A stretch of DNA of 64,000 nucleotides from Guillardia theta CCMP2712 (GCF_000315625.1 NW_005434627.1:69175-133174), one strand, 5' to 3'. Shown: positions 23,107-64,000, numbered from the stretch's first letter. The notes: generated by a model not told the origin, from the letters alone. Numbers and translations: made by a program.

Positions 23107-23568
23107 TCAATCGTCGTCGTCTCCATCTTTGGTCCTCGACTTGATACTGTGCAGCAAGTTCGCATCGATGGAGTCTGTCTTGTACATGCCAATATTCACC
23201 TCGGTCGAGATCTCCTCTAGCGTTATCAGCGCCTGCGGTGCGCTGGTAGGAGGGTAGTAAGTCGCCACTAGGACACAGTTTCTTGCCCGAACGCAGATCA
23301 CTCCCGAAGGTCCTGACTTGGCATGCAGGGTCTTGGGGTTGGCGGATATCCCGACGTACTTCCTGCCGTTGACTGGCAGCCCGTGTTCGAACATGCTGGC
23401 GGGGTCCAGGAAGGAGCGGTTGAGGAGGAGGAACTCCTTCTTCCTCACCCTGAAGCCATGTGTGCTACCATACGTCAGCCCGTCCATAGACAGGATGGCG
23501 GCTTCGCCGAACCTCTTGGTCCCGACGATGTCCGACAGCAGCTCTACCCATGACCCCTTGGACGTCAT
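23107..23568 (-). CDS. Profilin family protein with acidic C-terminal extension
   Basis: SWVELLSD…EAAILSMDG…GLPVNGRKY…LHAKSGPSGVICVRARNCVLVATY follows the profilin pattern; intronless. Confidence 0.85.
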   Translation of the reverse strand: MTSKGSWVELLSDIVGTKRFGEAAILSMDGLTYGSTHGFRVRKKEFLLLNRSFLDPASMFEHGLPVNGRKYVGISANPKTLHAKSGPSGVICVRARNCVLVATYYPPTSAPQALITLEEISTEVNIGMYKTDSIDANLLHSIKSRTKDGDDDD

Positions 23569-24099
23569 GATCCCCCTTACCCGCGTGCTGGCCCTTCCCT
23601 CCTCTCCTCCCTCCTCTCCTCCCTCCCCTCCTCACTCCTCCTCGTGCTTCCCCTCCTCACTCCACCCCTCAATCACCACTCCTCTACCTAACACCCTCGC
23701 TCGCACTCTTCTTCCTCCTCTCCCTCTCCCATCCTCTTCTTTCCCCTTCTCTCCTCCCTCCTCTCTCTCCCCCCTTCTCTCCCCTGCTCTCCTCTCCTCT
23801 CCCCTTCTCTCTTCTCTCGCTGCTCCTCTCTCGCTGCTCCCTCGCACACACGAAGGCTACCGGCAGGAGGGGTTTCGAAATTATCTAGTAGGTACGCGCG
23901 AATGCAAGAGGGGAAGCGAGGACAGTAGGGAGGAGAAGGGGGGGGGGAGGGAAAGGCGAAGGCTAGTACAGGGGTAAGGAGGAAGAAGGAGTTTCTTTAG
24001 ACAATGAGCAGCTACGAATGTGTGAGGAGGAGAGGAGGAGTGGAGGAGTGGAGGAGTGGAGGAGTGGAGAGGAGTGGGGAGGAGAAGAGAAGAGAGGAT

Positions 24100-24273
24100 G
24101 AGATGGAAGCGAAAGGACGGCTGCTTCTCGATTTCATCCTCTCTTGACCCTCCTCGGCTCCTCGGTCGACCTGGCGAAGACGCTGCCGCTGTTGGCAGGC
24201 GACTCGAAGTATTCTCTATCATGCGCTCCTGACCTGCAAGGAAAGATGTGAGGACGAGGACGAGGAAGAGGAA

Positions 24274-24312
<39 letters not shown>

Positions 24313-24892
24313 TGGCGCAGAAGCAAGAGGGTAGAAGGACATGAAGAGGAGCAAAGGTGAAGCAGAGCAGGCAGCAGTGGAGGTGGAGCAGTGGAAGACG
24401 AACAGAAGAAGTGGAGCGGGGAAAGAGAGGCAGGGGGGAGGGGGGGGGAGGAAGAGCAGTGGAAGAGGGGGGCAAGGGGAAGAGGGGACCGAGGAGGAGA
24501 GAGATGAGGGGAGGTGGTGGAGGGGAGGAGAGGACGTTGCAGAGAAGAGGACTGGAGTTCGTTGCTGCCCTGCCGGCTTGTCCTGAGCGTGTAGGGTGAG
24601 TACGAGATGACACAGTCAAGGTTCACCTCGACGCTGCTCCCGTTGTGCCTCTTGTCTTCTGCTGCTGGGCGCCTCATGGGGACTCTGCTCGGGGGAGGGG
24701 GGGAGAAGGAGACTTCCTGAGCGCTGGGCTGGTTCCTGTAGACTTCAGCTTGCTTCGACCGCATCACCTTCCATGTGCTTTTCCTGCGATCCAACGATTC
24801 AGGCGCTCTAGGATCCAGCAGGGGATGGTGGAGGAGATGGAGGACTTGGTTCAGAAGAGGGCAAGGGAAGGAGAGCTGCAGCAGGCACAGGT

Positions 24893-24940
<48 letters not shown>

Positions 24941-24943
24941 TCG

Positions 24944-24983
<40 letters not shown>

Positions 24984-27680
24984 CAGGTACATGCGATCAA
25001 CAAACTCGTCTCGGCCTCGCAACTCCGCCGCAGAGCTTCTTCGCTGACAGAGAAAAGATGACTGGAATGACATGACGGCAGAAGTTAACAACCTCGAGGG
25101 TAGCGGGGAAGATAGTTGAGCTAACGGCGGCACGAGCGCGATCGGACTCTTTCTTTCTGTTCTTCTGATTCAAAAGTATCTCAAGCTTCTCGTTCACGGA
25201 CTGAAAATCTTTCTGTTGGAAAGAAACCAGTCAGATCATAGCCATCATCATGTAAGACATCAGCTAAATCGTCATGTAAGACATCAGCTAAATCGTCATG
25301 TAAGACATCGGCTAAATCGCCATGTAAGACATCAGCTAAATCGCCATGTAAGATGTATCATCATATAACAGCTATATCATCTAGCAAGATGACGAGCGAC
25401 TTCCTTCCGAGACAGATCAACATCAACATCATCCAGTCTAGTCTATACATCTTCTTCTTCTGTCTAGTTCTACAACAACACATCATCGTCACCTCAAGTT
25501 TCTTGATGTTCTTGTGCATCGACTTGATCGCCATCTGCACCACCATCAACCTCCTTACATGTCAACCGACTCACGTCACATTAGGACTCGAGCCCCTTGC
25601 AGTGTCGAACTTCGGCTCGGCGTGCTGAAACTTGACGTTCTTGCTCTCTGCCGCCACCTCTGCCGCCATCTCGCCATCTTCATCGCGATCCTCTTGCCTC
25701 TTGTCCTTGTCCAACATCTTCTGCAAGTTCCCCGACATGCTGTCGATCTTCATGTCGAGCAGCTTCAGGACGAGCACGATGGACTGGATGTCCTTGCTGT
25801 CCGACTCCAGCAGGGCATTCTCTAGAGCCCTCTGCGCGAACCTGTTGAGCTCGCCCTTCATCATCAGCTGGAACTGCTCGCGGCCGAACTCCCTCTCCTC
25901 GTTGAGGAACCTCCCGTTCTCCGTTATGATGTCAAAGTCATCCTCAGTCAGCTGGATCGCGCGCTTCAGCGGCAGAGTCTTGATCGCGCTCTGGAACTCC
26001 TTGAAGCTAAGGCCCCCGGACTTGTCGATGTCGAGCCGCTCGTAGCACTGGTCGATCTTGTGCGTCAGGTCGGCAGTCCCAGTGAAGTGAGCTAGAGTCT
26101 GCGTCAGGGAGTCGAGGACCCCCGTGATGCGGGAAGCCTGCGACTTCTCCTCCCGCTCCTCCGCCTCCACCCTTGCGATCTCCTCCTTCTCCTTGGTCAC
26201 GAACGAGATGAACTCGTCAAGGAGGACGGCGACGACGACGTTGACCATGACGATGGTCCCGAGTAGGACGAAGCTGACGAAGAAGAAGGCGATGCCGTAA
26301 TTGATCCTCCCGTTGGGGTCGGGCTCGAAGAGAGAGCGGGTGACGGCACTTGCCCAGCTGTCGCCGGTGATGACCTGGAACATGGTGAAGAGAGAGTTGA
26401 GGAACGTGCCGAAGAACTGAGGCTGGAGGTCGCGGAAGAGGTAGGTAGCAACAGTGGCGTACACGCAGGCGAGGAGGAGGAGGATGAGAAAACAGTTGAT
26501 GACGGGGAGGGTGGCAGAGCTCAGGGCCTTGACGATCCTGCTGAGGGCCTTGAAGTACCGGAACAGGCGGCCAACACGGAGCACGCGGATCAGCCGCAGG
26601 AGGGACAAGAGCCTGTTGGTGATGATGAGAGAGGAGAGGAGGACAACGACGACGCAGACGTCGAGGAGGTTCCACGGGTCACTGCAGAAGGGGAGGAACC
26701 GGTCCTCGGAGTGGACGAAAAGGTTGAAGAGCAGCTCGATAGAGAAGATCGCTGTGAAGGAGAGAGTGATGTCCTCGAAGATGCGCGATCCTTCAGTCCC
26801 ATCCTCCGGGAGGACCTGCGCCTCGAACAGGGCGGTGGCGAAGGAAGCGAGGATGATAGCGGCGATCACCAGCTGCATCTTTCTGGAGTGGTAAAAGTCG
26901 AACGCCCGGGTCCTGAACTTGGCAAGCCTGCTTCCGCCCGACTTGATCTCGAGCAGCTCCTGCTCCTTCCTCCTCTTGGAGTCCGCGATCGCCTGCTCCA
27001 TCAGCTCCAGCCACTTGCTGTACTCCTCGTCCGACTGCGCTCGTAGCACATACTTCTTCCCTGCGTTGTAACCATCGGGGGAGGTGACTATGACAAAGGT
27101 TAGGAAGTCGTCTGCAGCGGAGGATGAAGCAGCCTTGTCTTCTCCGTGAGAGCCGATGAGGCACATGATCTCGTTGAGAGGTATGATGTCCACTGCCGTG
27201 TTGGAGTCGATGTACGCGAAGAGCAGAAACTCGCTCGTCATCACGACGTTCCTGGGGTTCCACGAGACCATGATGCTGTTGACGGCACGTCGTGAGAGGT
27301 AGTTGGGGGAGCATAAAGAGCACGCGACAGACCTGAGGATCTTCTTCTCCAGCGTTCCCTTCATGATGCACCTCTTGTCAAGAGGCAGAGAGACTCTGCC
27401 GTCGCACATAGCGTCTGAGGGACAAGATCAATCAGAGGATGCCCGCAGGAGACTGCAACTCGTCCTGACCTGACAGCTCCTCAAAGGAGAGTTGACCATC
27501 GCCATTGACATCCAAGAGCTCTCGGAGGTCGCACAAGCTCGCCGATCGTGCGGTCTTCATGGTCGAGAACCTGCGATAAGGGAGGAAAGCAATCACGTGG
27601 AGGTAAAACAGGACAGAGCGGAATGGTCGCTGCAACCGTGAACTTTCTCACGGGTGAATCTGTATCGCAACTTTCATCAT
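24100..27680 (-). CDS. Single-domain voltage-gated cation channel 1 (EF-hand + PH + 6TM + EF-hand; EukCat/BacNav/CatSper-like)
   Basis: N-terminal DVNGDGQLSFEEL; PH-like KGTLEKK…WNPRNVV…YVLRAQSDEEYSKWL; S3 DPWNLLD; S4 LRLIRVLRVGRLFR; filter FQVITGDSWAS; S6 NVVVAVLLDEF; EF-hand DIDKSGGLSFKEF. Further spliced C-terminal exons run to ~24.1 kb (end approximate). Confidence 0.9.
25249..25353 (+). repeat. 24-bp tandem repeat (CATGTAAGACATCAGCTAAATCGY) x4.4, intronic
   Basis: Read directly. Confidence 0.95.
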
Positions 27681-28029
27681 GACTGCCTGACAGTCTTACA
27701 CATGTGAGGATGTCTAAGCTGCTCTTGCAAGTACTACTGAGTCGAGGAACCTTGCATGCTCACCGCGGTACCTTCTATGTCTTCACGCAAAATCTGCTCC
27801 CCCTGTCCAACCGAGCTCACCGTGTCTTGACCGAACCAGGGATTCCTCGTCCTCTACTGCTAACGGACTCCCCACATTCGTTTCCTTCCTCTTCCTCTCC
27901 TCCTCTGCCTCTACTTCCCTTGGACTTTACTGCGCTTTCCCGCCCCCATTTTTTGTAGGGGCACACTGGGGGACTCCAAATTCGAAAAAAAAAAGTCAAA
28001 AATCTCTTGACACCACGAGCCTGGCAGAA

Positions 28030-28340
28030 CAGAAAATGACCGTCCGGACGGGCGTCACGGTTGCCAGTGACTCATTTGAATTCCATGACCTGCGCGGCCC
28101 GGCGGTGAAGCAGCCAGTCAGCCGGGCCGGTCCAGTGATCCGTGGCACCCGGCCCCCGGCAAGTGACCAGACTCGCCGTCAGAGTCAAGTCCGTGGACTG
28201 GCCGGGCATGCGGGAGTAAACCGTGTGTGTCAGTGCCACGGTGGTGAGCGTACGGTCAGGCAAGTCGGCGGACGCCATGCCGGCGGGGACCGCAGTCACA
28301 CTGCACAAGGCTCAGCTTGTGTACCGTACTAGCCTAGTAG
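28030..28340. other. GC-rich palindrome-dense block 4 between the two channel genes
   Basis: CCGGCC/GGCCC units, CAGTGAC/GACTC motifs and a TACTAG-C-CTAGTA hairpin near 28327. Confidence 0.6.
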
Positions 28341-28431
28341 ATCGATTCCTGATTTATTAAAACAAATATTGACTAAGTCAAAGTTATCCTACCAGTCATG
28401 GCCCGGAAACAAGGCGAAATTCGTGAACCGT

Positions 28432-31400
28432 TTATGCATCACCGTTAGTGCCTGTGAAGGGACCGGGCGGCGACTTGTTCTTCGTGATGCACAACAGCGC
28501 TATGAGCGCGTCCTCGTGCAACTTGAAGATCTCTCCTGCCTTGGTCTTCACCTCCAGCTCGCCTCCTTCCACTTCCACGATCGACGCGTCAACGGCTCCC
28601 TGCTGGACATGCCTCCCAGGCCTTCGAGTGGCAAAGCAAGTCATTCGTCTCGCACCACTGCCTCCACCTTCTGACTCACCTGATTTGCTTCGGGAAGGAG
28701 GAGGAGGAGCGCTGCTCGGACGCCTCTAGAGAGGGCGAGCTGTTCCGTGAGTGCCGACCGCTCCCCAGGATCGAGGCACTTCCTCCAGTCAGAACGAGAT
28801 AGACGTGCTCCTCGTCCGCAAGGACCACTCGTCCCTCCATGCGCGGCGCGTCTAGTTGCACCTGCTGCCTCCTCGTGGCAAGGCTCGATAACACGCTGGT
28901 CCACGGCAGCTTCACGACCAGGCTTCTGACGGGCCGACCAGGAACGGGGGACTGAGGGATGCTGCGGTTGTGGTCTAACGTGTTGTAGCTGAGGCTTCTG
29001 TAGAGCTCCAGCTTGGCGGCGTAAGGGCGCTGAGGAGGAGACGAGCAATCATCGGCGTCCGACTGCTCCATGTCCTTCAAAGGGCTATGAGCTCCTCGGG
29101 TTCTCGACGAGGAACGCACGAAAATCGTTTCGCAGTCTGTGCCCATGCACGTGACTTTCCCACCTCGGGACACGGTACAGCCAACTGAAGCCTTCTTCTT
29201 GCCGTTCTTGTGCGCTTCTCCGTCGTGGAAGAGGGACAGGATGCGGTCAAGCTTGCTGTCCATGTCGTCCAGCCGCTGCTGCTGCCCCTTGAGCTCTGAC
29301 CACAGCGCCTTTGCGTCATCTACGTTGCCGGAGGAGACCGACCGCGCTCCGCCGTCAGCTGCGAGTCGCTTCCACTCGCGGAACGCGAAGTAGACGGAGG
29401 AGCGAAAGAGCCGAGTGAGGATCTGCTTGCGCGACTCCGACTTCCTGGAGTTCGAGAACACCTGCGGCATGATCTGCGACCTGATCTGATCCAGCGACGC
29501 GATGTTGGTGTGAGCGGCGAGGAGGAGCTGCCGCAGCCAGTCGTCCTCCACCAGAGAGATCTGAGAGATCATCTGCAAGGACCTGGTGAGCACACAGAGA
29601 CATCGGGAAAACACATCAAGCACACACAGCTCACGGCACCTCCCAGCGCCTCACCCACCTTCCTACGCGCGTACTCGTCGAGCTGGAAGCGTATCATGGC
29701 CTCGAAGGCCTTGGGCGTCAGCTCGCCGTCGTCATCGAGGAGGGACCTGTCAAAGGTGAGAGCCTCGAAGTCCTCGAGGGACAGTCGGATGTTCTTCTTC
29801 AGCTTGAGGCGAGCTAGACCCTGTTGGAACTCCTTGAAACTGAGCGAACCATTTTCATCCAAGTCAAGCCTCTGGCGCGCACGTCAAACTCGCAGACTTG
29901 GCAGGGCGACCGGCTCACCTGGTAGAGGTTGCTGATGCGGTTGGTGAGGTCCTCGGAGGTGGTGAAGGTCATGAGGCTAGGGAGAAGAGGGTCGAGTGGT
30001 CCTGCGAGGTCGTCGATGTGAAGCTGCTTCATCTGAAGGAGTTCGATCAGAGCTCCTGGGCAGGGGAGGGGNNNNNNNNNNNNNNNNNNNNNNNNNNNNN
30101 NNNNNNNNNNNNNNNNNNNNNNNNNNNNNNNNNNNNNNNNNNNNNNNNNNNNNNNNNNNNNNNNNNNNNNNGAGGGATGGAGGGAGGGAGGGAGGGGAGC
30201 GAGCTTGACCGTTTCCGACTGAAACTTTGCCCTCGCCTCCTCGCGCTCTCGTTCCACCATGGTGATGAACTCGTCCAGGAGGACAGCAACGACGATGTTC
30301 ATGAGGACCTGCAACATGCTGTGAGGATAAGGCGGGACTAGTCACTGGGACTTACGAGTCCAACTAGGAGCATGTAGGAGACGAAGAAGAAGCCGACCTG
30401 ACAGGATCAGTCAGAGGTGCGGGCGGTATGAGCGCGCTGCTGCTCTGACCCCAAAGTCGTGGGATTGATGAGCCAGGTCGTAGTTGAAGAGAGATCTCGA
30501 GATAATCGACCCCCACGCGTCGCCGGTGGCAACTTGATACATCTGACCGACACGCGTCAGCTCGCCATGTTGTGCTCGCACACTCATCTGACAGTGAACA
30601 TGGAGCGCATGAAAGTGCCGAAGAACTCAGGTTGGTCATGTGAGAAGAGATTGGTGCCGATGACAGCGTAAATCGATGTTATCAATGACATGATGCAGAG
30701 TGCGTTGGCAACGGGTAGTACTGGGAGATGAGATCAGTACACAGAAGCGTAAGGCCTACAGGGAGTACCAGACGCTACGAGAGCGTTAATGAGGATTCTC
30801 AAGGATGCGAGCTTGCTGGTGGAGGAGGAATCTAGTCAATGGCAGGAGCAGCAAAGGCGACAAGCGTCTACCGGAAGAGGCGGACCATCTTGAACACTCG
30901 AGCTAACCTTAAGATGCTCATAGCGAACAGACCTTCCACGAACTGGGAGACGAGAGAGAGGACGACGACGACCAGATCTGAGTGGATGAATGAGCGACCA
31001 TTACAAGGAAAGAGTCAAGGCGAACCTAACAAGTTCCATCCGTCTTTGAAGAAATCTACCGAATAATGTCCATAGAGATTCATCAGCAAGTCCTGCCCTC
31101 AACTTCAACCCATCGACAAGGCAAGGGGCAGCTCTCACCAGCGTGAAGGAGAAGTTGTAGAACCACTCGAGCGCCGTGAAGACCTTGTCTCGATGTGAGC
31201 CTGGCTCTGGGAGAATCTGAGCATTGACGAGAGCCGTAATGTAAGAAGCGAAGATTATCCCTCCCACGATGCTCTGGAAACAAAGCTGTTGTAAATCTTC
31301 CGCGACTTCCTTCTTGACCGAGCGAACCATCCCTTCTCTTTCGTCGCAAACTCCTTCTCTTGCGCTATGATCACCATCTCCTCCAGCAAATTCGTCAACT

Positions 31401-31951
31401 CCGTGTACTGATCTTCGTCCTTCACCCCGAGGAATGTTATGCGGCCATAGTTGAATCCGTCTTCGATCGTGTGGATGCTGAAAGTGAGCAAACCCTCAGC
31501 GTCATCGTCTAAGATGTTTGCTGTGCTTAAGTCTCTCTCTTTCATGGAGAAAGCGAATGAGCCTAGGGAAGTTAGCGAAGACTTTCGCAACAAAGTGTTG
31601 CTGTCTTTGGTCCCAAAGGTCTCCTGTCGACGTATGCTCTTCACCTCTGCCAGCGGGATCTGATCGAGCACAGTGCTCCCATGGACCTTGGAGAGTAAGA
31701 TTTCTGAGTCTGTGACGTGGATCTTCCTTCTCTGCCATGTCACCCCGACCTTGCTGCATGGCAGAAAAATCGCAGAAAGGAAGGCGTTAGTCGAAACCTC
31801 GCAAGTTACAGACATATCACCTGACGACCTGGCGCAGGACCTCGACGGAGGCCTTGATCTCTGAGTCAGGAGGAAGCTTCCTCTCCACGCTGTCGCTATC
31901 CTCCTCCTTCACCCTCATACGAGCCGCACGAACGCCCATAAAGGCCGCCAT
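28432..31951 (-). CDS. Single-domain voltage-gated cation channel 2 (PH + 6TM + EF-hand), intron-rich, with an apparent 1-nt frameshift
   Basis: PH-like WQRRKIHVTDSEILL…LDQIPLAEV…FSIHTIEDGFNYGR; DGWNLLD; S4 LRLARVFKMVRLFR; filter YQVATGDAWGS; MNIVVAVLLDEF; EF-hand DLDENGSLSFKEF. At least 11 short introns; frame break at 31278-31280. Confidence 0.85.
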
Positions 31952-32706
31952 CGCGTGTGTGAACACAAGATCGGACTGGCCCGAAAAGGTAGGGTGATAT
32001 CTGGTATGCCCACGGTGGGATGACATATCTGCACTGGAATCAGGGGTGGGGGTAGTCTTGATGGGGGTACCAGTGGATCAATCTGTACTAGCTGATGATG
32101 GGTTTCATACACTATACCGGGGTAGGGGTACAATAATGAGGGGTTATGATTCGGAGGTCAAGTTCAAAGGGGTGGGGGCTATAGGTCAAGTCATTCGGCT
32201 TGTAAAGTACCGCCGAGTACCCCCTACCAATGGGTCTCTCACACTACCCTACCCCTATAATGTTTGTTTTGTAGCCGGGTCCACTAACCCATCATCAGTG
32301 AGCACTCCCGAGCTAGTCAAGTTTTTATACTTGTACGGAATAGGAAAACGGTACTGCAGAGGAGTCAAAGGTGCTTTGAACTTGGAGCTGTGACGAGTAC
32401 CCGGTGGTTTAAAGGGGGGATTGAATCTGAGGGGTACTTGGGGATCCGCACGACGCAGGTTCTGGGAATTCAGGGGGTACTTATGGGGTCCAGTTAACAT
32501 TCGTGCAGCAGGAAGTTAATTTCAAACCAATTTCGAATTCTCAAAAAGTTGAGAATGTAAAATTGAAACTTTGAGCGCAACATAGGAAGTTTCGTGATGA
32601 CTTAGGACGGGGTCATAATCCATAGGGACTGGGGGTACTCACAGCTGCAACCGTTAAACTTTCCAACGGGTTGAACTCCAGCGGGGGACCTTACTAGGCT
32701 ACTAGG

Positions 32707-61680: not shown

Positions 61681-64000
61681 ATGCGCCATACCTTCCCAGA
61701 AAGAGGAGGGTGGGGGCTACTGACCCTCCTCCTGACCCTGACGCTGACCGGGAGCTCATCCGACGTCCCCCCCTCGCAACTTCATCCTCCTAGTGCCTGC
61801 TGGATCAGGACGGTCTCGCTGGGATCCGTGCGAGGGAGGAGCATGAAGGTTTGCAATGTCCCCGTCAGGCACGCGAGGGAGGAGCGGTGTAGGAGACTGG
61901 TCATGCAGATGGGAGAGAAGGAGCTCGTGGCCGCCAACAGCACGTCTGTGCCCTGCATGCCTCCTCTGCCCACAGCAGCCTCGAAGCCCAGCAGGAAGAA
62001 GGGGAGCGAGGTGCTCATGACCCTCGATGAGCTGCTGGCTAAGGTACGCAGCTACTGCACTTCCCCGGACGAGGAGATGATCAGCAAGGCCTTCTACTTC
62101 GCTCAGAGGATGCACGAGGGGCAGCTGCGTCGGTCAGGAGAGCCGTACTTCATCCATCCCGTCGGGGTGGCGAGCATCATAGCGGACATGAAGCTCGACT
62201 CCGCCTCCATCGTCACTGGCCTGCTGCACGACACAGTGGAGGACACCTCTGCCTCGCTAGAGCTGATACAGCAGGAGTTCGGGTCGGAGGTGGCGCAGCT
62301 GGTCGACGGGGTGACGAAGATCGGCAAGATTCAGTTCACGTCCAAGGAGGAGCAGCAGGCAGAGAACTTCCGCAAGATGATCGTCGCCATGGCCCGCGAC
62401 ATCCGCGTCATCCTCGTGAAGCTGGCGGACAGGACGCACAACGTCCGCACCCTCAAGTTCGTCCCTGCGCAGAAGCAGAAGGAGGTGGCGAGAGAGACGC
62501 TGGACCTGTATGCTCCCCTCGCTCACCGCCTCGGCATTTTCTGGATGAAGACGGAGCTGGAAGATACGAGCCTGCGCTACCTCGAGCCCGAGGTCTACGA
62601 GGAACTCAAGATGATGGTGGCGGCGAAGAAGGAGGAGCGGCAGGTCGCTCCTCTCCTTCTTGTGAGCCTGCGGTACCTGACGGTGAAGCTGCAGGCCTAC
62701 ACCAACGAGGTCATGGAGATCTTGGAGAAGAGCCTGGTGGACCAGGGCCTTACCAACGTCGTGGTTAGTCCTCCTTCCCGCCCTCCTCCGTCCTTTGCTT
62801 CCTCTTCCCATATCCATTCCCCTCTTCCTTCTTCCTTCCTTCCCTTAGCTTCCATTCATTTGAACCCTTCGATCCGCTCCCCTCTCTCGGCTTTCTCTGC
62901 TCCTCCAAACCCTCCTTGCCTTCTCTTCCGCCCTCCCTGTCCTGCCCTTCATCTCCCTCATGCATGCCCTCCATCCCCCTCCTCCTCTCTTGGCTCATCG
63001 CAGACGCAGGTGACTGGCCGAGCGAAACATTTCTACTCCATCTATCAGAAGATGAGAAGCCGCAGGTACACGCCTTGCACCAGCTACACGCCTTGCACCA
63101 GCTACACGCCTGTGTTGGAACTGCAGGAGGCTGACGGTCGATCTACTTGCAGGCTGAAGCATGTCAGCGAAGTGCAGGACCTGATAGCGTTCAGGATCTT
63201 GACCGACGACCTGAGTCAGTGCTACCAGGCCCTCGGCATCGTTCACAGCATGTGGAAGGTAAAGCATAGCGGCCAACAAAGTGCGATCATGCTAAAATTC
63301 TCCTCCTTCTTGCTATACTCCGTCCTCTCCTCCTCCTCTCTTCCTCCTTCCTCTCTTCCACTCCTCCTCTCCCTTGCCCCCGTCTACTGCAGCCTGTCCC
63401 TGGGAGGTTCAAGGACTACATCGCGCTCCCGAAGCCCAACATGTATCGATCGCTCCACACGACCGTCATCGGGCCTGGTGGCCAGCGCATCGAAGTTCAG
63501 ATCCGGACGTCGGAGATGCACCGTGTAGCAGAGGAGGGAATAGCTGCTCACTGGATGTACAAGGTACCCCTCCCAACCCTCCTCCATCCTACCCCTCCTC
63601 CCTCCTCCCGTCTCACCTCCTCTCCCTGTTCCGTATCTTCCAGCTCTGTCCCTCCTTCCTCCCTCCTCTCCCTCCCTCTTGAACCTTCAGTTTCCTCGCT
63701 GCTGTTCCCTGCAACTTCCGTACTCCTAGCTCCCCGTAACTTCTCCCTCTCCTCCCGCTCTCTCGCTCCTCCTTCCCCTCCGCGTCTCTCACGTCCTCCA
63801 TCCCCCAGGGAGAATCCAAGGGTGTGGAGGAGGCGCGCAGGTTCGCATGGCTGAGGCAGCTGGTCGAGTGGGTGCAGCAGCTCAACGACCCTCAAGAGTT
63901 TCTGCACAGCGTAAAGGAGGTGAAAGCGAATGACCTCTCCTGCTGGTCCTGACTTGCTCCTCCTCTCTTCTTTCTTGTTCCTCCTCCTCCTCCTCCTCCT
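61681..64000 (+). CDS. RSH: Long RelA/SpoT homolog, (p)ppGpp synthetase/hydrolase with bipartite-like presequence; runs off window
   Basis: [81 protein letters not shown]…[12 protein letters not shown]; hydrophobic [13 protein letters not shown] plus S/R-rich N-terminal extension. Confidence 0.95.

What the first reader, a model, noticed from the sequence alone, without database searches (positions are those of the whole stretch)
24100..31951. Tandem pair of PH-domain-fused, EF-hand-bearing single-domain voltage-gated channels with Asp-type TGDxW filters
Seen: both paralogs have a PH-like domain before S1, an Arg-rich S4 (RLIRVLRVGRLFR / RLARVFKMVRLFR), a BacNav-style pore with filters TGDSWAS and TGDAWGS, and a C-terminal EF-hand. 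Channel 1 also has an N-terminal EF-hand. Known: single-domain 6TM Na/Ca channels exist in bacteria (BacNav, TLESW), as CatSper subunits (TxDxW-type) and in algae (EukCats). Inference: a PH fusion could couple phosphoinositide sensing and Ca2+ feedback to voltage gating, the filter Asp suggests Ca2+ permeability, and adjacent paralogs might co-assemble as heterotetramers. I am not aware of this architecture being characterised.
Basis: partly seen in the sequence, partly recalled or inferred. Interest (0 to 1): 0.8.

Follow-up and report, generated by a model that had tools for sequence, protein, structure and literature searches.

The report
PH-domain voltage-gated channels of a cryptophyte
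Two neighbouring genes of a cryptophyte alga encode voltage-gated cation channel subunits of the known EukCatB family that carry an extra lipid-binding-type (PH) domain, a family-wide cryptophyte feature that I found in no paper.

Summary
Two minus-strand genes (Ch1 27560-24997, Ch2 31951-28676) each encode PH-like domain, six-transmembrane voltage-gated channel core and a canonical EF-hand. The S4 segments are Arg-rich and the pore filters are TGDSWAS (Ch1) and TGDAWGS (Ch2). Ch1 has a further N-terminal EF-hand.

The N gap (30072-30171) lies in a predicted intron of Ch2. Across it Ch2 stays colinear with Ch1 without indels.

Ch2 has a 1-base frameshift in a T run (31278-31280). Contigs of two of three public read sets carry the extra base that restores the frame.

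The stretch 24100-24996 is microsatellite-rich. I found nothing to show it is coding.

These are not a new channel class. They belong to a large cryptophyte clade (57 of the 79 sequences in the tree). It is sister to the NavEh/EhEUKCATB1-like channels, the known EukCatB family. In that clade the PH domain and an Asp filter are the rule. The NavEh-like proteins have neither.

Ch1 and Ch2 are 34% identical and sit in different subclades, so they are old paralogues, not a recent duplication.

Ca2+ permeability is supported by the published E305D mutant of EhEUKCATB1. Lipid sensing by the PH domain is plausible but untested. Heteromer formation has no support.

First-reader notes report the same architecture at at least six other loci of this genome.

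The parts
24997..27560 (-). Ch1 gene model, 708 aa. Exons 27560-27470, 27414-27333, 27275-25580, 25534-25493, 25212-24997. The last two exons and the stop are tentative.
   Evidence: Introns of 55, 57, 45 and 280 nt, all GT-AG. Ortholog Hanusia phi P0001: 84% identity overall, 90% in the core. The spliced beta1-beta2 region matches paralogues in length.
27477..27512 (-). Ch1 N-terminal EF-hand loop DVNGDGQLSFEE (aa 17-28)
   Evidence: Pfam EF-hand_5, E 1.4e-4. Canonical loop pattern. Conserved in Hanusia P0001 as DLNGDGQVSVEE.
26966..27370 (-). Ch1 PH domain (aa 46-161). It spans intron 2 (27276-27332) and is followed by a long helix leading to S1.
   Evidence: Pfam PH, E 2.3e-4. Profile against solved PH domains, E 2e-5. 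AlphaFold2 pLDDT 81, seven strands plus a C-terminal helix. Foldseek top 50 are all PH domains.
26201..26896 (-). Ch1 channel core S1-S6 (aa 185-416), including S4 (26558-26596) and filter TGDSWAS (26348-26368)
   Evidence: Pfam Ion_trans, E 8.7e-33. PDB sequence hits to Cav, Nav, NavEh and NavAb. Hydrophobic segments and the S4 charge pattern.
25997..26032 (-). Ch1 C-terminal EF-hand loop DIDKSGGLSFKE (aa 473-484), first hand of an EF pair whose second hand is degenerate
   Evidence: Pfam EF-hand_1, E 9.5e-4. Alignment to the first EF pair of calcineurin B, E 2.3e-4.
28676..31951 (-). Ch2 gene model, 850 aa with one X. Twelve exons: 31951-31821, 31753-31139, 31092-31026, 30977-30872, 30815-30769, 30720-30593, 30542-30450, 30397-30356, 30308-30210, 30032-29919, 29871-29659, 29572-28676. 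The start codon and the 3' end are uncertain.
   Evidence: Eleven GT-AG introns. Ten are 46-86 nt; intron 9 is 177 nt as written and holds the gap. The model is colinear with Ch1 over 546 aa at 34% identity.
31354..31858 (-). Ch2 PH-like domain (aa 32-177). It spans intron 1 (31754-31820), has a disordered insert of about 33 residues, and lacks the conserved Trp of the C-terminal helix.
   Evidence: Aligns with the family PH regions. AlphaFold2 pLDDT 77.7. Foldseek best E 2e-3, all hits PH/PTB/talin-F3 superfold. No Pfam PH hit on its own.
31278..31280 (-). T run where the assembly is one base short, giving a frameshift between the PH linker and S1
   Evidence: read laying reports 'put in behind 31277: A' in one contig each of X1 and X2, and not in X3. 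With the extra base the frame runs on through IYNSF, which matches FYHS/IYES in paralogues.
30258..31296 (-). Ch2 channel core S1-S6 (aa 197-427) in eight exons, including S4 (30815-30909) and filter TGDAWGS (30507-30527)
   Evidence: tblastn of homologues, the gene model and the tree placement.
30033..30209 (-). Predicted intron 9 of Ch2, which contains the assembly gap 30072-30171
   Evidence: Donor ACG|GTCAAG and acceptor TTCAG|ATG, both in phase 0. The S6-to-EF linker then has the same length as in Ch1, in an ungapped BLAST alignment. Contigs of X1 and X3 run 86-109 nt into the gap from 30069.
29830..29865 (-). Ch2 C-terminal EF-hand loop DLDENGSLSFKE (aa 484-495)
   Evidence: Canonical loop. 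Pfam EF-hand_6 and EF-hand_1, E about 0.01, on the exon piece.
27561..28675 (.). Spacer of about 1.1 kb between the two genes, with no long ORF
   Evidence: ORF list and sequence.

Best explanation
The window is nuclear DNA of a cryptophyte alga of the Guillardia/Hanusia lineage.

The two genes encode subunits of depolarisation-activated, tetrameric single-domain cation channels. They belong to the cryptophyte branch of the EukCatB family, whose characterised member is NavEh/EhEUKCATB1 of Emiliania huxleyi.

Proposed working of each channel:
- Each subunit supplies a voltage sensor. S4 carries five positive charges at every third position.
- Each subunit supplies one quarter of the pore. Four Asp residues (TGDxW) form the high-field-strength ring. 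I therefore expect a Ca2+-permeable, poorly Na+-selective channel rather than the Na+-selective TGESWSE type.
- After S6, a cytoplasmic EF-hand domain with one canonical Ca2+ loop gives Ca2+ feedback on gating.
- Before S1, a PH domain joined by a long helix replaces the N-terminal inactivation helix of NavEh. Its most likely role is to bind an anionic inner-leaflet lipid (a phosphoinositide), and so set where or how readily the channel opens.

Shown here: the domain identities, the family placement and the conservation.
Inferred: ion selectivity, Ca2+ feedback and the PH ligand.

The two genes are old paralogues that happen to be neighbours.
For: Family and core:
- Ion_trans, E 8.7e-33.
- PDB hits to Cav, Nav, NavEh and NavAb.
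- All named close homologues are cryptophytes.
- The recovered TGESWSE proteins are NavEh-like: P0077 against 7x5v/8j7m, E 4e-66.
- Careful tree: bacterial group 100/99, NavEh-like group 98/89, TGD/PH group of 57 rows on one side of a branch (98/43), Ch1+Hanusia P0001 100/100, Ch2 subclade 99/81.

PH domain:
- Fold and sequence evidence.
- A PH HMM built from the family hits nearly every TGD-type protein with a complete N-terminus, and none of the NavEh-like proteins.
- Four positions are basic in 86-100% of 22 family PH domains: the end of beta1, the R of W-x-P-R in beta2, the G-(K/R) of GYNSGR, and one further Arg.
- In the profile alignment these positions line up with the basic residues of the PLEKHA7 PH domain.

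Selectivity:
- The EhEUKCATB1 E305D mutant is permeable to Ca2+ and Ba2+, and that channel has a C-terminal EF pair and Ca2+-dependent currents.
- NavEh is described as N-helix, 6TM and an EF-hand-like domain.

EF-hands and voltage sensor:
- Canonical EF loops and the S4 charge pattern.
- EF pair similar to calcineurin B.
Against: - No expression evidence for either gene. One read was laid from the only RNA run. The Hanusia 'transcript' P0001 seems to retain its introns.
- Ch2 is interrupted in the assembly by a gap and a 1-nt frameshift. Only two of three read sets support the repair.
- Pfam scores for PH and EF-hand in the window proteins are below the curated cut-offs.
- The canonical phosphoinositide signature K-Xn-(K/R)-X-R is incomplete: the first basic residue of beta2 is N, E or Q.
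- Ch2 lacks the conserved Trp of the PH helix.
- No EukCatA, EukCatC or CatSper sequences were in the tree, and the TGD-clade branch has a low SH-aLRT (43).
- Selectivity cannot be read safely from one residue.
Confidence: 0.7

Rival explanations
1. The N-terminal PH-like domain is not a lipid sensor. It would be a protein-interaction or intramolecular gating module, for example one that docks on the voltage sensor, the S4-S5 linker or the EF-hand domain, or that binds a partner as the GRK2 PH domain binds G-beta-gamma.
For: - The best Foldseek matches include the GRK2 PH domain with its extended C-terminal helix.
- For Ch2 the best matches are PTB and talin-F3 domains, which bind peptides.
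- The beta2 (K/R)-x-R motif is incomplete.
- From general knowledge, only a minority of PH domains bind phosphoinositides with high affinity.
Against: Four basic positions at or near the canonical pocket are conserved in 86-100% of family members. They align with basic residues of lipid-binding PH domains. The domain sits next to the inner leaflet by topology.
Confidence: 0.35
2. Despite the Asp filter, the channels are Na+-selective or monovalent-selective. They would carry fast Na+ action potentials like NavEh, and Ca2+ would act only as a modulator through the EF-hands.
For: - The rest of the filter (T-G-x-S/A-W) is close to that of the Na+-selective EukCatB/BacNav channels.
- Some bacterial relatives fetched here also have TGD filters and have not been characterised.
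Against: The single E-to-D change in EhEUKCATB1 removed Na+ selectivity and allowed Ca2+/Ba2+ currents. Diatom EukCatAs with Asp at position 0 pass both Na+ and Ca2+.
Confidence: 0.2
3. One or both loci are unexpressed or decaying copies (pseudogenes) of a large multigene family.
For: - The Ch2 assembly has a frameshift at 31278-31280 and a gap.
- X3 contigs do not show the extra base, and essentially no RNA reads were laid.
- No close ortholog of Ch2 was recovered; the best is 54% identity in the core.
Against: - All 15 introns keep GT-AG ends and the reading frame.
- Every functional motif (S4 charges, filter, EF loop, PH core residues) is intact in both genes.
- The frameshift lies in a homopolymer, and two read sets restore it.
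- Ch1 is 90% identical in the core to its Hanusia ortholog.
Confidence: 0.1
4. The two units are one gene that encodes a two-repeat channel. The Ch2 'stop' would be spliced out and joined to an acceptor just upstream of the Ch1 ATG.
For: The Ch2 stop overlaps a perfect donor (AG|GTGAGT at 28677). An acceptor (CGCAG|G) 11 nt before the Ch1 ATG is in the matching phase (sequence).
Against: - The intron would be about 1.1 kb. The other introns of these two genes are 45-86 nt, apart from one of 280 nt and the gap-holding intron 9.
- The Hanusia ortholog P0001 begins at the homologous Met.
- No two-repeat relatives were seen among the hits.
Confidence: 0.04

Closest known systems
NavEh / EhEUKCATB1 (EukCatB single-domain voltage-gated channel of Emiliania huxleyi; PDB 7X5V; PMC9114117; bioRxiv 10.1101/2020.04.29.068528)
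   Same: - Eukaryotic single-domain 6TM voltage-gated channel that presumably forms homotetramers.
- Filter scaffold T-G-x-S-W.
- A cytoplasmic EF-hand(-like) domain after S6.
- Sister group in my tree.
- Helliwell et al. 2019 place cryptophyte channels in the same EukCatB clade.
   Different: - Filter Asp instead of Glu, the change that abolished Na+ selectivity in the E305D mutant.
- An N-terminal PH domain of about 120-145 residues plus a long helix, instead of the short N-helix 'ball' that gives N-type inactivation.
- No long S5-P1 extracellular loop.
- Ch1 has an additional N-terminal EF-hand.
Bacterial single-domain sodium/calcium channels (BacNav: NaChBac, NavAb; engineered CavAb)
   Same: Single 6TM repeat, S4 charge ladder, pore helix-filter-pore helix with a conserved Trp. 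Sequence similarity E 1e-25 to 1e-27.
   Different: - The window genes are eukaryotic and contain introns.
- They are separated from the ten actinobacterial and proteobacterial relatives used as outgroup with 100/99 support.
- BacNavs have no PH or EF-hand domains.
Diatom EukCatA channels (Helliwell et al. 2019, PMC6509283)
   Same: Single-domain algal channels, some with Asp at filter position 0, that pass Na+ and Ca2+ and support depolarisation-activated Ca2+ signalling.
   Different: A different clade according to the literature. No EukCatA sequence was available to test this here, and no PH domain is reported for them.
CatSper subunits
   Same: Single-repeat channel subunits with a T-x-D-x-W type filter and Ca2+ permeability (from general knowledge).
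   Different: CatSper is an animal sperm-specific obligate heterotetramer with many auxiliary subunits and weak voltage dependence. It did not appear among the top 60 solved-structure matches. Its relationship was not tested by phylogeny.
Lipid-regulated voltage-gated channels without a dedicated domain (Kv7/KCNQ, Cav, TPC1)
   Same: The concept of a phosphoinositide setting the gating of a voltage-gated channel. In TPC1, cytosolic EF-hands also modulate voltage gating (from general knowledge).
   Different: In those channels the lipid binds directly to the transmembrane core or the linkers. Here a separate, covalently attached PH module would do the sensing. This is unproven.

Membership tests
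Voltage-gated ion channel superfamily (Pfam Ion_trans PF00520) | Match to the family model above the curated cut-off | tested here: met
   Ch1 scores 114 bits against a cut-off of 25. Ch2 could only be tested in exon pieces, but it aligns colinearly with Ch1 through S1-S6.
Voltage-gated ion channel superfamily (Pfam Ion_trans PF00520) | S4 with basic residues at every third position, and a re-entrant pore loop between S5 and S6 | tested here: met
   Five charges in each S4, filters TGDSWAS and TGDAWGS, and the expected hydrophobic segments.
EukCatB (Helliwell et al. 2019) | Eukaryotic channel with a single 6TM repeat (not four-domain) | tested here: met
   One Ion_trans match per protein. The gene models have one repeat each.
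EukCatB (Helliwell et al. 2019) | Falls in the clade that holds haptophyte, cryptophyte and pelagophyte channels, apart from BacNav | tested here: met
   Sister to the NavEh-like proteins and separated from the bacterial outgroup at 100/99. The paper states that cryptophyte channels are in clade B.
EukCatB (Helliwell et al. 2019) | Distinct from the EukCatA, EukCatC and CatSper clades | not tested
   No reference sequences of those clades were in hand. The papers' supplementary ID tables are not held.
EukCatB, coccolithophore (Na+-selective) type | Filter TGESWSE with Glu at position 0 | tested here: not met
   Asp at position 0 in both genes and throughout the cryptophyte-type clade.
PH domain (PF00169) | Seven-stranded beta sandwich capped by a C-terminal helix | tested here: met
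   Ch1: AlphaFold2 pLDDT 81, seven strands plus a helix, Foldseek top 50 all PH domains. Ch2, whose piece lacks beta1: PH-superfold hits only, best E 2e-3.
PH domain (PF00169) | Pfam gathering score | tested here: inconclusive
   Ch1 scores 22 bits against a cut-off of 25.1. Ch2 has no hit. Nine of 13 family N-terminal regions match at E <= 0.01, the best at 1e-7.
PH domain (PF00169) | Conserved Trp in the C-terminal helix | tested here: met
   Met in Ch1 and in 95% of 22 family members. Not met in Ch2, which has Leu.
Phosphoinositide-binding PH domains | Basic signature K-Xn-(K/R)-X-R in the beta1-beta2 hairpin | tested here: not met
   The Lys at the end of beta1 and the last Arg are conserved (91% and 86% basic). 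The middle (K/R) is N, E or Q. Two further conserved basic positions lie in the GYNSG(K/R) region.
EF-hand | Canonical 12-residue Ca2+-binding loop (D-x-[DNS]-x-[DNSG]-...-E) | tested here: met
   Three loops fit the pattern. Pfam scores of 16-22 bits are below the cut-offs, as is usual for single hands. The pair resembles calcineurin B.
EF-hand | Actual Ca2+ binding | not testable with these tools
   Needs biochemistry.

The most novel reading that the evidence does not exclude
Cryptophytes have turned the EukCatB channel into a three-input device. A covalently attached PH domain reports inner-leaflet phosphoinositides (or targets the channel to a particular membrane, such as the flagellar membrane). 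The EF-hands report Ca2+. The voltage sensor reports depolarisation. Together they gate a Ca2+-permeable pore. If so, this would be the first voltage-gated cation channel with a dedicated lipid-sensor domain. It would also be a candidate for the depolarisation-activated Ca2+ entry step downstream of cryptophyte channelrhodopsins.
Probability: 0.3. Interest if true: 0.75.

Novelty: new variant of a known kind. Interest (0 to 1): 0.5.

Why it matters
[quoted passage not shown] Only coccolithophore members have been studied.

The cryptophyte branch differs in two functionally loaded places. The filter carries Asp, and a PH domain stands where NavEh has its inactivation helix.

To my knowledge (not a systematic survey), no characterised voltage-gated cation channel carries a PH domain. 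These genes therefore offer a natural system to ask how a lipid-binding module can be coupled to a voltage sensor.

They also bear on how cryptophytes, the source of widely used channelrhodopsins, turn depolarisation into Ca2+ signals.

The finding is a family-wide feature, not a peculiarity of this locus. This makes it more robust but less of a single-locus discovery.

Tried and rejected
- RNA evidence. The only RNA run offered (X5) laid one read on the 6 kb, so the splice sites and expression could not be checked.
- Supplementary ID tables of both EukCat papers are not held. I could not confirm that the G. theta paralogues are the very proteins those authors called EukCatB.
- Pfam on the Ch2 exon pieces gave no PH and no Ion_trans hit, because the pieces are short.
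- Spliced proteins cannot be handed to the tools by reference. Ch1 was therefore folded with 19 intron-coded residues in the beta1-beta2 hairpin, and Ch2 without beta1.
- A search for a Ch2 ortholog was not possible under the length window of the word search.
The region 23600-25000 is microsatellite and low-complexity sequence, and similarity to Hanusia stops near 25093, so I rejected it as coding.
- Recent tandem duplication and heterotetramer. Rejected as unsupported: 34% identity and separate starred subclades.
- A two-repeat fusion gene. Considered and judged unlikely (see rivals).
- The bacterial promoter/terminator scan of the spacer does not apply to a eukaryote and found nothing.
- The large representative-protein search was not run, on the operators' advice, because the family was already clear.

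Full report
ORGANISM AND LOCUS

The window is eukaryotic, with short GT-AG introns and microsatellites.

The best protein match of the long ORF 25571-27409 (minus strand) is a Hanusia phi transcript product, at 84% identity overall and 90% in the channel core. Every named homologue is from a cryptophyte: seven Guillardia theta paralogues at about 40% identity, plus Hemiselmis, Cryptomonas, Geminigera, Baffinella and Proteomonas.

In the tree the branch lengths of the Ch1-Hanusia pair (0.07/0.07) equal those of known G. theta-Hanusia ortholog pairs. The genome is therefore a cryptophyte of the Guillardia/Hanusia lineage. I did not prove the species.

GENE MODELS

I built the models from tblastn of homologues, from reading the sequence and from scripted assembly.

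Ch1:
- Five exons: 27560-27470, 27414-27333, 27275-25580, 25534-25493 and 25212-24997. The protein is 708 aa.
- Introns are 55, 57, 45 and 280 nt.
- The 612-aa ORF seen by simple ORF finding contains intron 2 (27276-27332) read through in frame. Removing it makes the beta1-beta2 hairpin of the PH domain the same length as in paralogues.
- The last two exons are supported only by similarity to the tail of the Hanusia protein.
- Downstream, 23600-25000 is microsatellite-rich.

Ch2:
- Twelve exons from 31951 to 28676, giving 850 aa.
- Ten of the eleven introns are 46-86 nt. Intron 9, which holds the gap, is 177 nt as written. All introns are GT-AG.
- The start codon is uncertain, because an in-frame ATG also lies at 32026.
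- The 3' end is uncertain, because the stop overlaps a consensus donor.

The two models align colinearly over 546 residues at 34% identity, from the PH domain to beyond the EF-hand.

THE GAP AND THE FRAMESHIFT

The N run at 30072-30171 falls between a phase-0 donor (ACG|GTCAAG, intron start 30209) and a phase-0 acceptor (TTCAG|ATG, intron end 30033).

With this intron the linker between S6 and the EF-hand domain has exactly the length found in Ch1, and the BLAST alignment is ungapped there. As far as colinearity can tell, the gap hides no coding sequence.

Contigs of two public read sets run 86-109 nt into the gap from 30069. None bridges it.

Separately, the assembly shifts frame between the PH linker and S1. 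Read laying shows one extra base in the T run 31278-31280 in contigs of X1 and X2 but not X3. With that base the frame continues through IYNSF, which matches FYHS/IYES in paralogues. I read this position as X and treat it as a probable homopolymer error.

X1-X3 are colinear with the genome and show no splice joints, so they behave as DNA. The RNA run X5 gave one read. There is thus no expression evidence.

DOMAINS

Channel core:
- Ion_trans, E 8.7e-33.
- Solved-structure sequence matches are to Cav3, Cav1/2 and Nav repeats, to NavEh (7x5v/8j7m, E 2e-29) and to NavAb/NaChBac (E 1e-25 to 1e-27).
- S4 carries R-R-R-R-R (then K) in Ch1 and R-R-K-R-R in Ch2.
- The filters are TGDSWAS and TGDAWGS.

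EF-hands:
- The three loops fit the canonical pattern.
- The region after S6 in Ch1 aligns with the first EF pair of calcineurin B (E 2.3e-4). Its second hand is degenerate.

PH domain:
- In an alignment of 13 N-terminal regions (A1), Pfam PH matches 9 members (best E 1e-7; Ch1 22 bits, just under the cut-off).
- The profile finds the solved PH domains of PLEKHA7, PLEKHA6, TAPP1, ROCK2 and AKT.
- The AlphaFold2 model of Ch1 (pLDDT 81, pTM 0.72) has seven strands and a long C-terminal helix.
- All of its 50 best Foldseek matches in the PDB are PH domains. TM-score normalised to the target reaches 0.78.
- The Ch2 piece could only be given without beta1. It folds with pLDDT 77.7 around a 33-residue disordered insert, and matches PTB, PH and talin-F3 domains at E 2e-3 to 4e-2.
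- Ch2 lacks the helix Trp that 95% of family members keep.

FAMILY CONTEXT

Helliwell et al. defined EukCatA (diatoms), EukCatB (haptophytes, cryptophytes, pelagophytes) and EukCatC (dinoflagellates) (PMC6509283).

EhEUKCATB1 has the filter TGESWSE. It is Na+-selective and has a C-terminal EF pair. It becomes permeable to Ca2+ and Ba2+ when Glu is changed to Asp (bioRxiv 10.1101/2020.04.29.068528).

Its structure (NavEh) shows an N-terminal helix that plugs the open gate, six TM segments and an EF-hand-like domain (PMC9114117).

A word search restricted to the channel core of Ch1 returned 89 proteins. They fall into two types:
- TGD-type proteins. Nearly all of these with a complete N-terminus match a PH HMM built from the family.
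- A smaller set with TGESWSE (two with TGDSWSE) and no PH domain. One of them, P0077, has NavEh as its best solved match at E 4e-66.

To root a tree I fetched bacterial relatives. I then built a careful IQ-TREE of 79 cores. The results:
- Bacterial group, 100/99.
- NavEh-like group, 98/89.
- The 57 TGD/PH-type rows lie on one side of a branch (98/43).
- Ch1 pairs with Hanusia P0001 (100/100) inside a 26-row clade (100/98).
- Ch2 lies in a separate clade (99/81) with an environmental protein and three G. theta paralogues.

So the PH domain and the Asp filter mark the whole cryptophyte-type branch. The two window genes are old paralogues.

First-reader notes on this genome list the same architecture at at least six other loci. 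I did not check those loci, but their existence fits the many paralogues in G. theta and Hanusia.

MECHANISM

Shown:
- Each protein has an intact voltage sensor, pore, EF loop and PH fold.
- The family conserves four basic positions in the PH domain: the end of beta1 (91% basic), the Arg of W-x-P-R in beta2 (86%), the residue after GYNSG (100%) and one more (86%).

Inferred:
- Four subunits form a depolarisation-activated pore. Its Asp ring lets Ca2+ through, by analogy with the E305D mutant and with diatom EukCatAs.
- Ca2+ binding to the EF-hand domain under the gate feeds back on gating, by analogy with the Ca2+ dependence of EhEUKCATB1.
- The PH domain hangs from a long pre-S1 helix next to the inner leaflet. 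It binds an anionic lipid and thereby tunes or localises the channel.

The last inference is the weakest. The classic beta2 (K/R)-x-R motif is incomplete, and PH folds often bind proteins instead of lipids.

Because the PH domain occupies the place of the NavEh N-helix, N-type inactivation may be absent or different in these channels.

NOVELTY

The channel family is known, and the proteins are in public databases, some auto-named 'PH domain-containing protein'.

The two EukCat papers do not mention a PH domain. Two further full-text searches listed no paper on a PH-fused EukCat or voltage-gated channel.

I therefore class this as a new variant of a known kind, of moderate interest.

Noticed in passing
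window 23107-23568 (-): A profilin gene lies just downstream of Ch1 as a single ORF (Pfam Profilin, E 6e-20).
   Followed up: partly
window 61681-63528 (+): A RelA/SpoT homologue: a 615-aa ORF with HD_4 (E 1e-53) and RelA_SpoT domains. This would be a (p)ppGpp enzyme, of the kind algae usually target to the plastid.
   Followed up: partly
window 25244-25353: A 24-nt tandem repeat (4.6 copies, 95% matches) lies inside predicted intron 4 of Ch1. Hexamer and trinucleotide microsatellites lie at 24250-24312, 24893-24940 and 24946-24986.
   Followed up: partly
window 31907-31951 (-): The predicted N-terminus of Ch2 (MAAFMGVRAARMRVK) has small or hydrophobic residues followed by spaced basic ones. 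This recalls the composition of the NavEh N-helix that plugs the gate. However, the start codon is uncertain (another in-frame ATG lies at 32026), and the G. theta relative P0017 lacks such a segment.
   Followed up: no
window 28676-28680 and 27561-27575 (-): The Ch2 stop codon overlaps a consensus donor (AG|GTGAGT). An acceptor 11 nt upstream of the Ch1 ATG is in the matching phase. A 1.1-kb splice would fuse the two genes into a two-repeat channel. I judge this unlikely, and only RNA data can settle it.
   Followed up: partly
window 30069-30072: Contigs of public read sets X1 and X3 extend 86-109 nt into the assembly gap (they begin CCAGGGAGGACAGCACCG on the + strand). The far side of the gap (30172-30208) is a CT-rich repeat where reads were skipped. 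The gap could probably be closed from existing reads.
   Followed up: no
P0001 (Hanusia phi, EukProt), residues 30-82: The Hanusia ortholog of Ch1 appears to come from an unspliced transcript. After EELS it reads through the equivalents of introns 1 and 2, with exon 2 in a shifted frame (VRRQ matches the +1 frame of window exon 2). It therefore does not confirm the splice sites.
   Followed up: partly
P0050 (G. theta GUITHDRAFT_104646); P0011, P0012, P0041, P0044, P0047: Other family members vary the N-terminal module. One G. theta paralogue has a C2 domain (PF00168) ahead of a partial PH match. Several others have EF-hand loops between two halves of the PH match, that is, a split PH domain with an inserted EF pair.
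   Followed up: partly
L009, L011, L029, L030, L040 (bacterial loci): Several actinobacterial, Burkholderiales and Helicobacter single-domain channels fetched as outgroup carry TGD-type filters (such as TGDSWAD and TGDGWSD) instead of the classic TLESW.
   Followed up: no
P0034, P0035 (EukProt: Yihiella yeosuensis, Biecheleria cincta): NavEh-like proteins with filters TGESWSE and TGDSWSE occur in dinoflagellate transcriptomes. They could be genuine dinoflagellate genes or could come from prey or contaminants.
   Followed up: no
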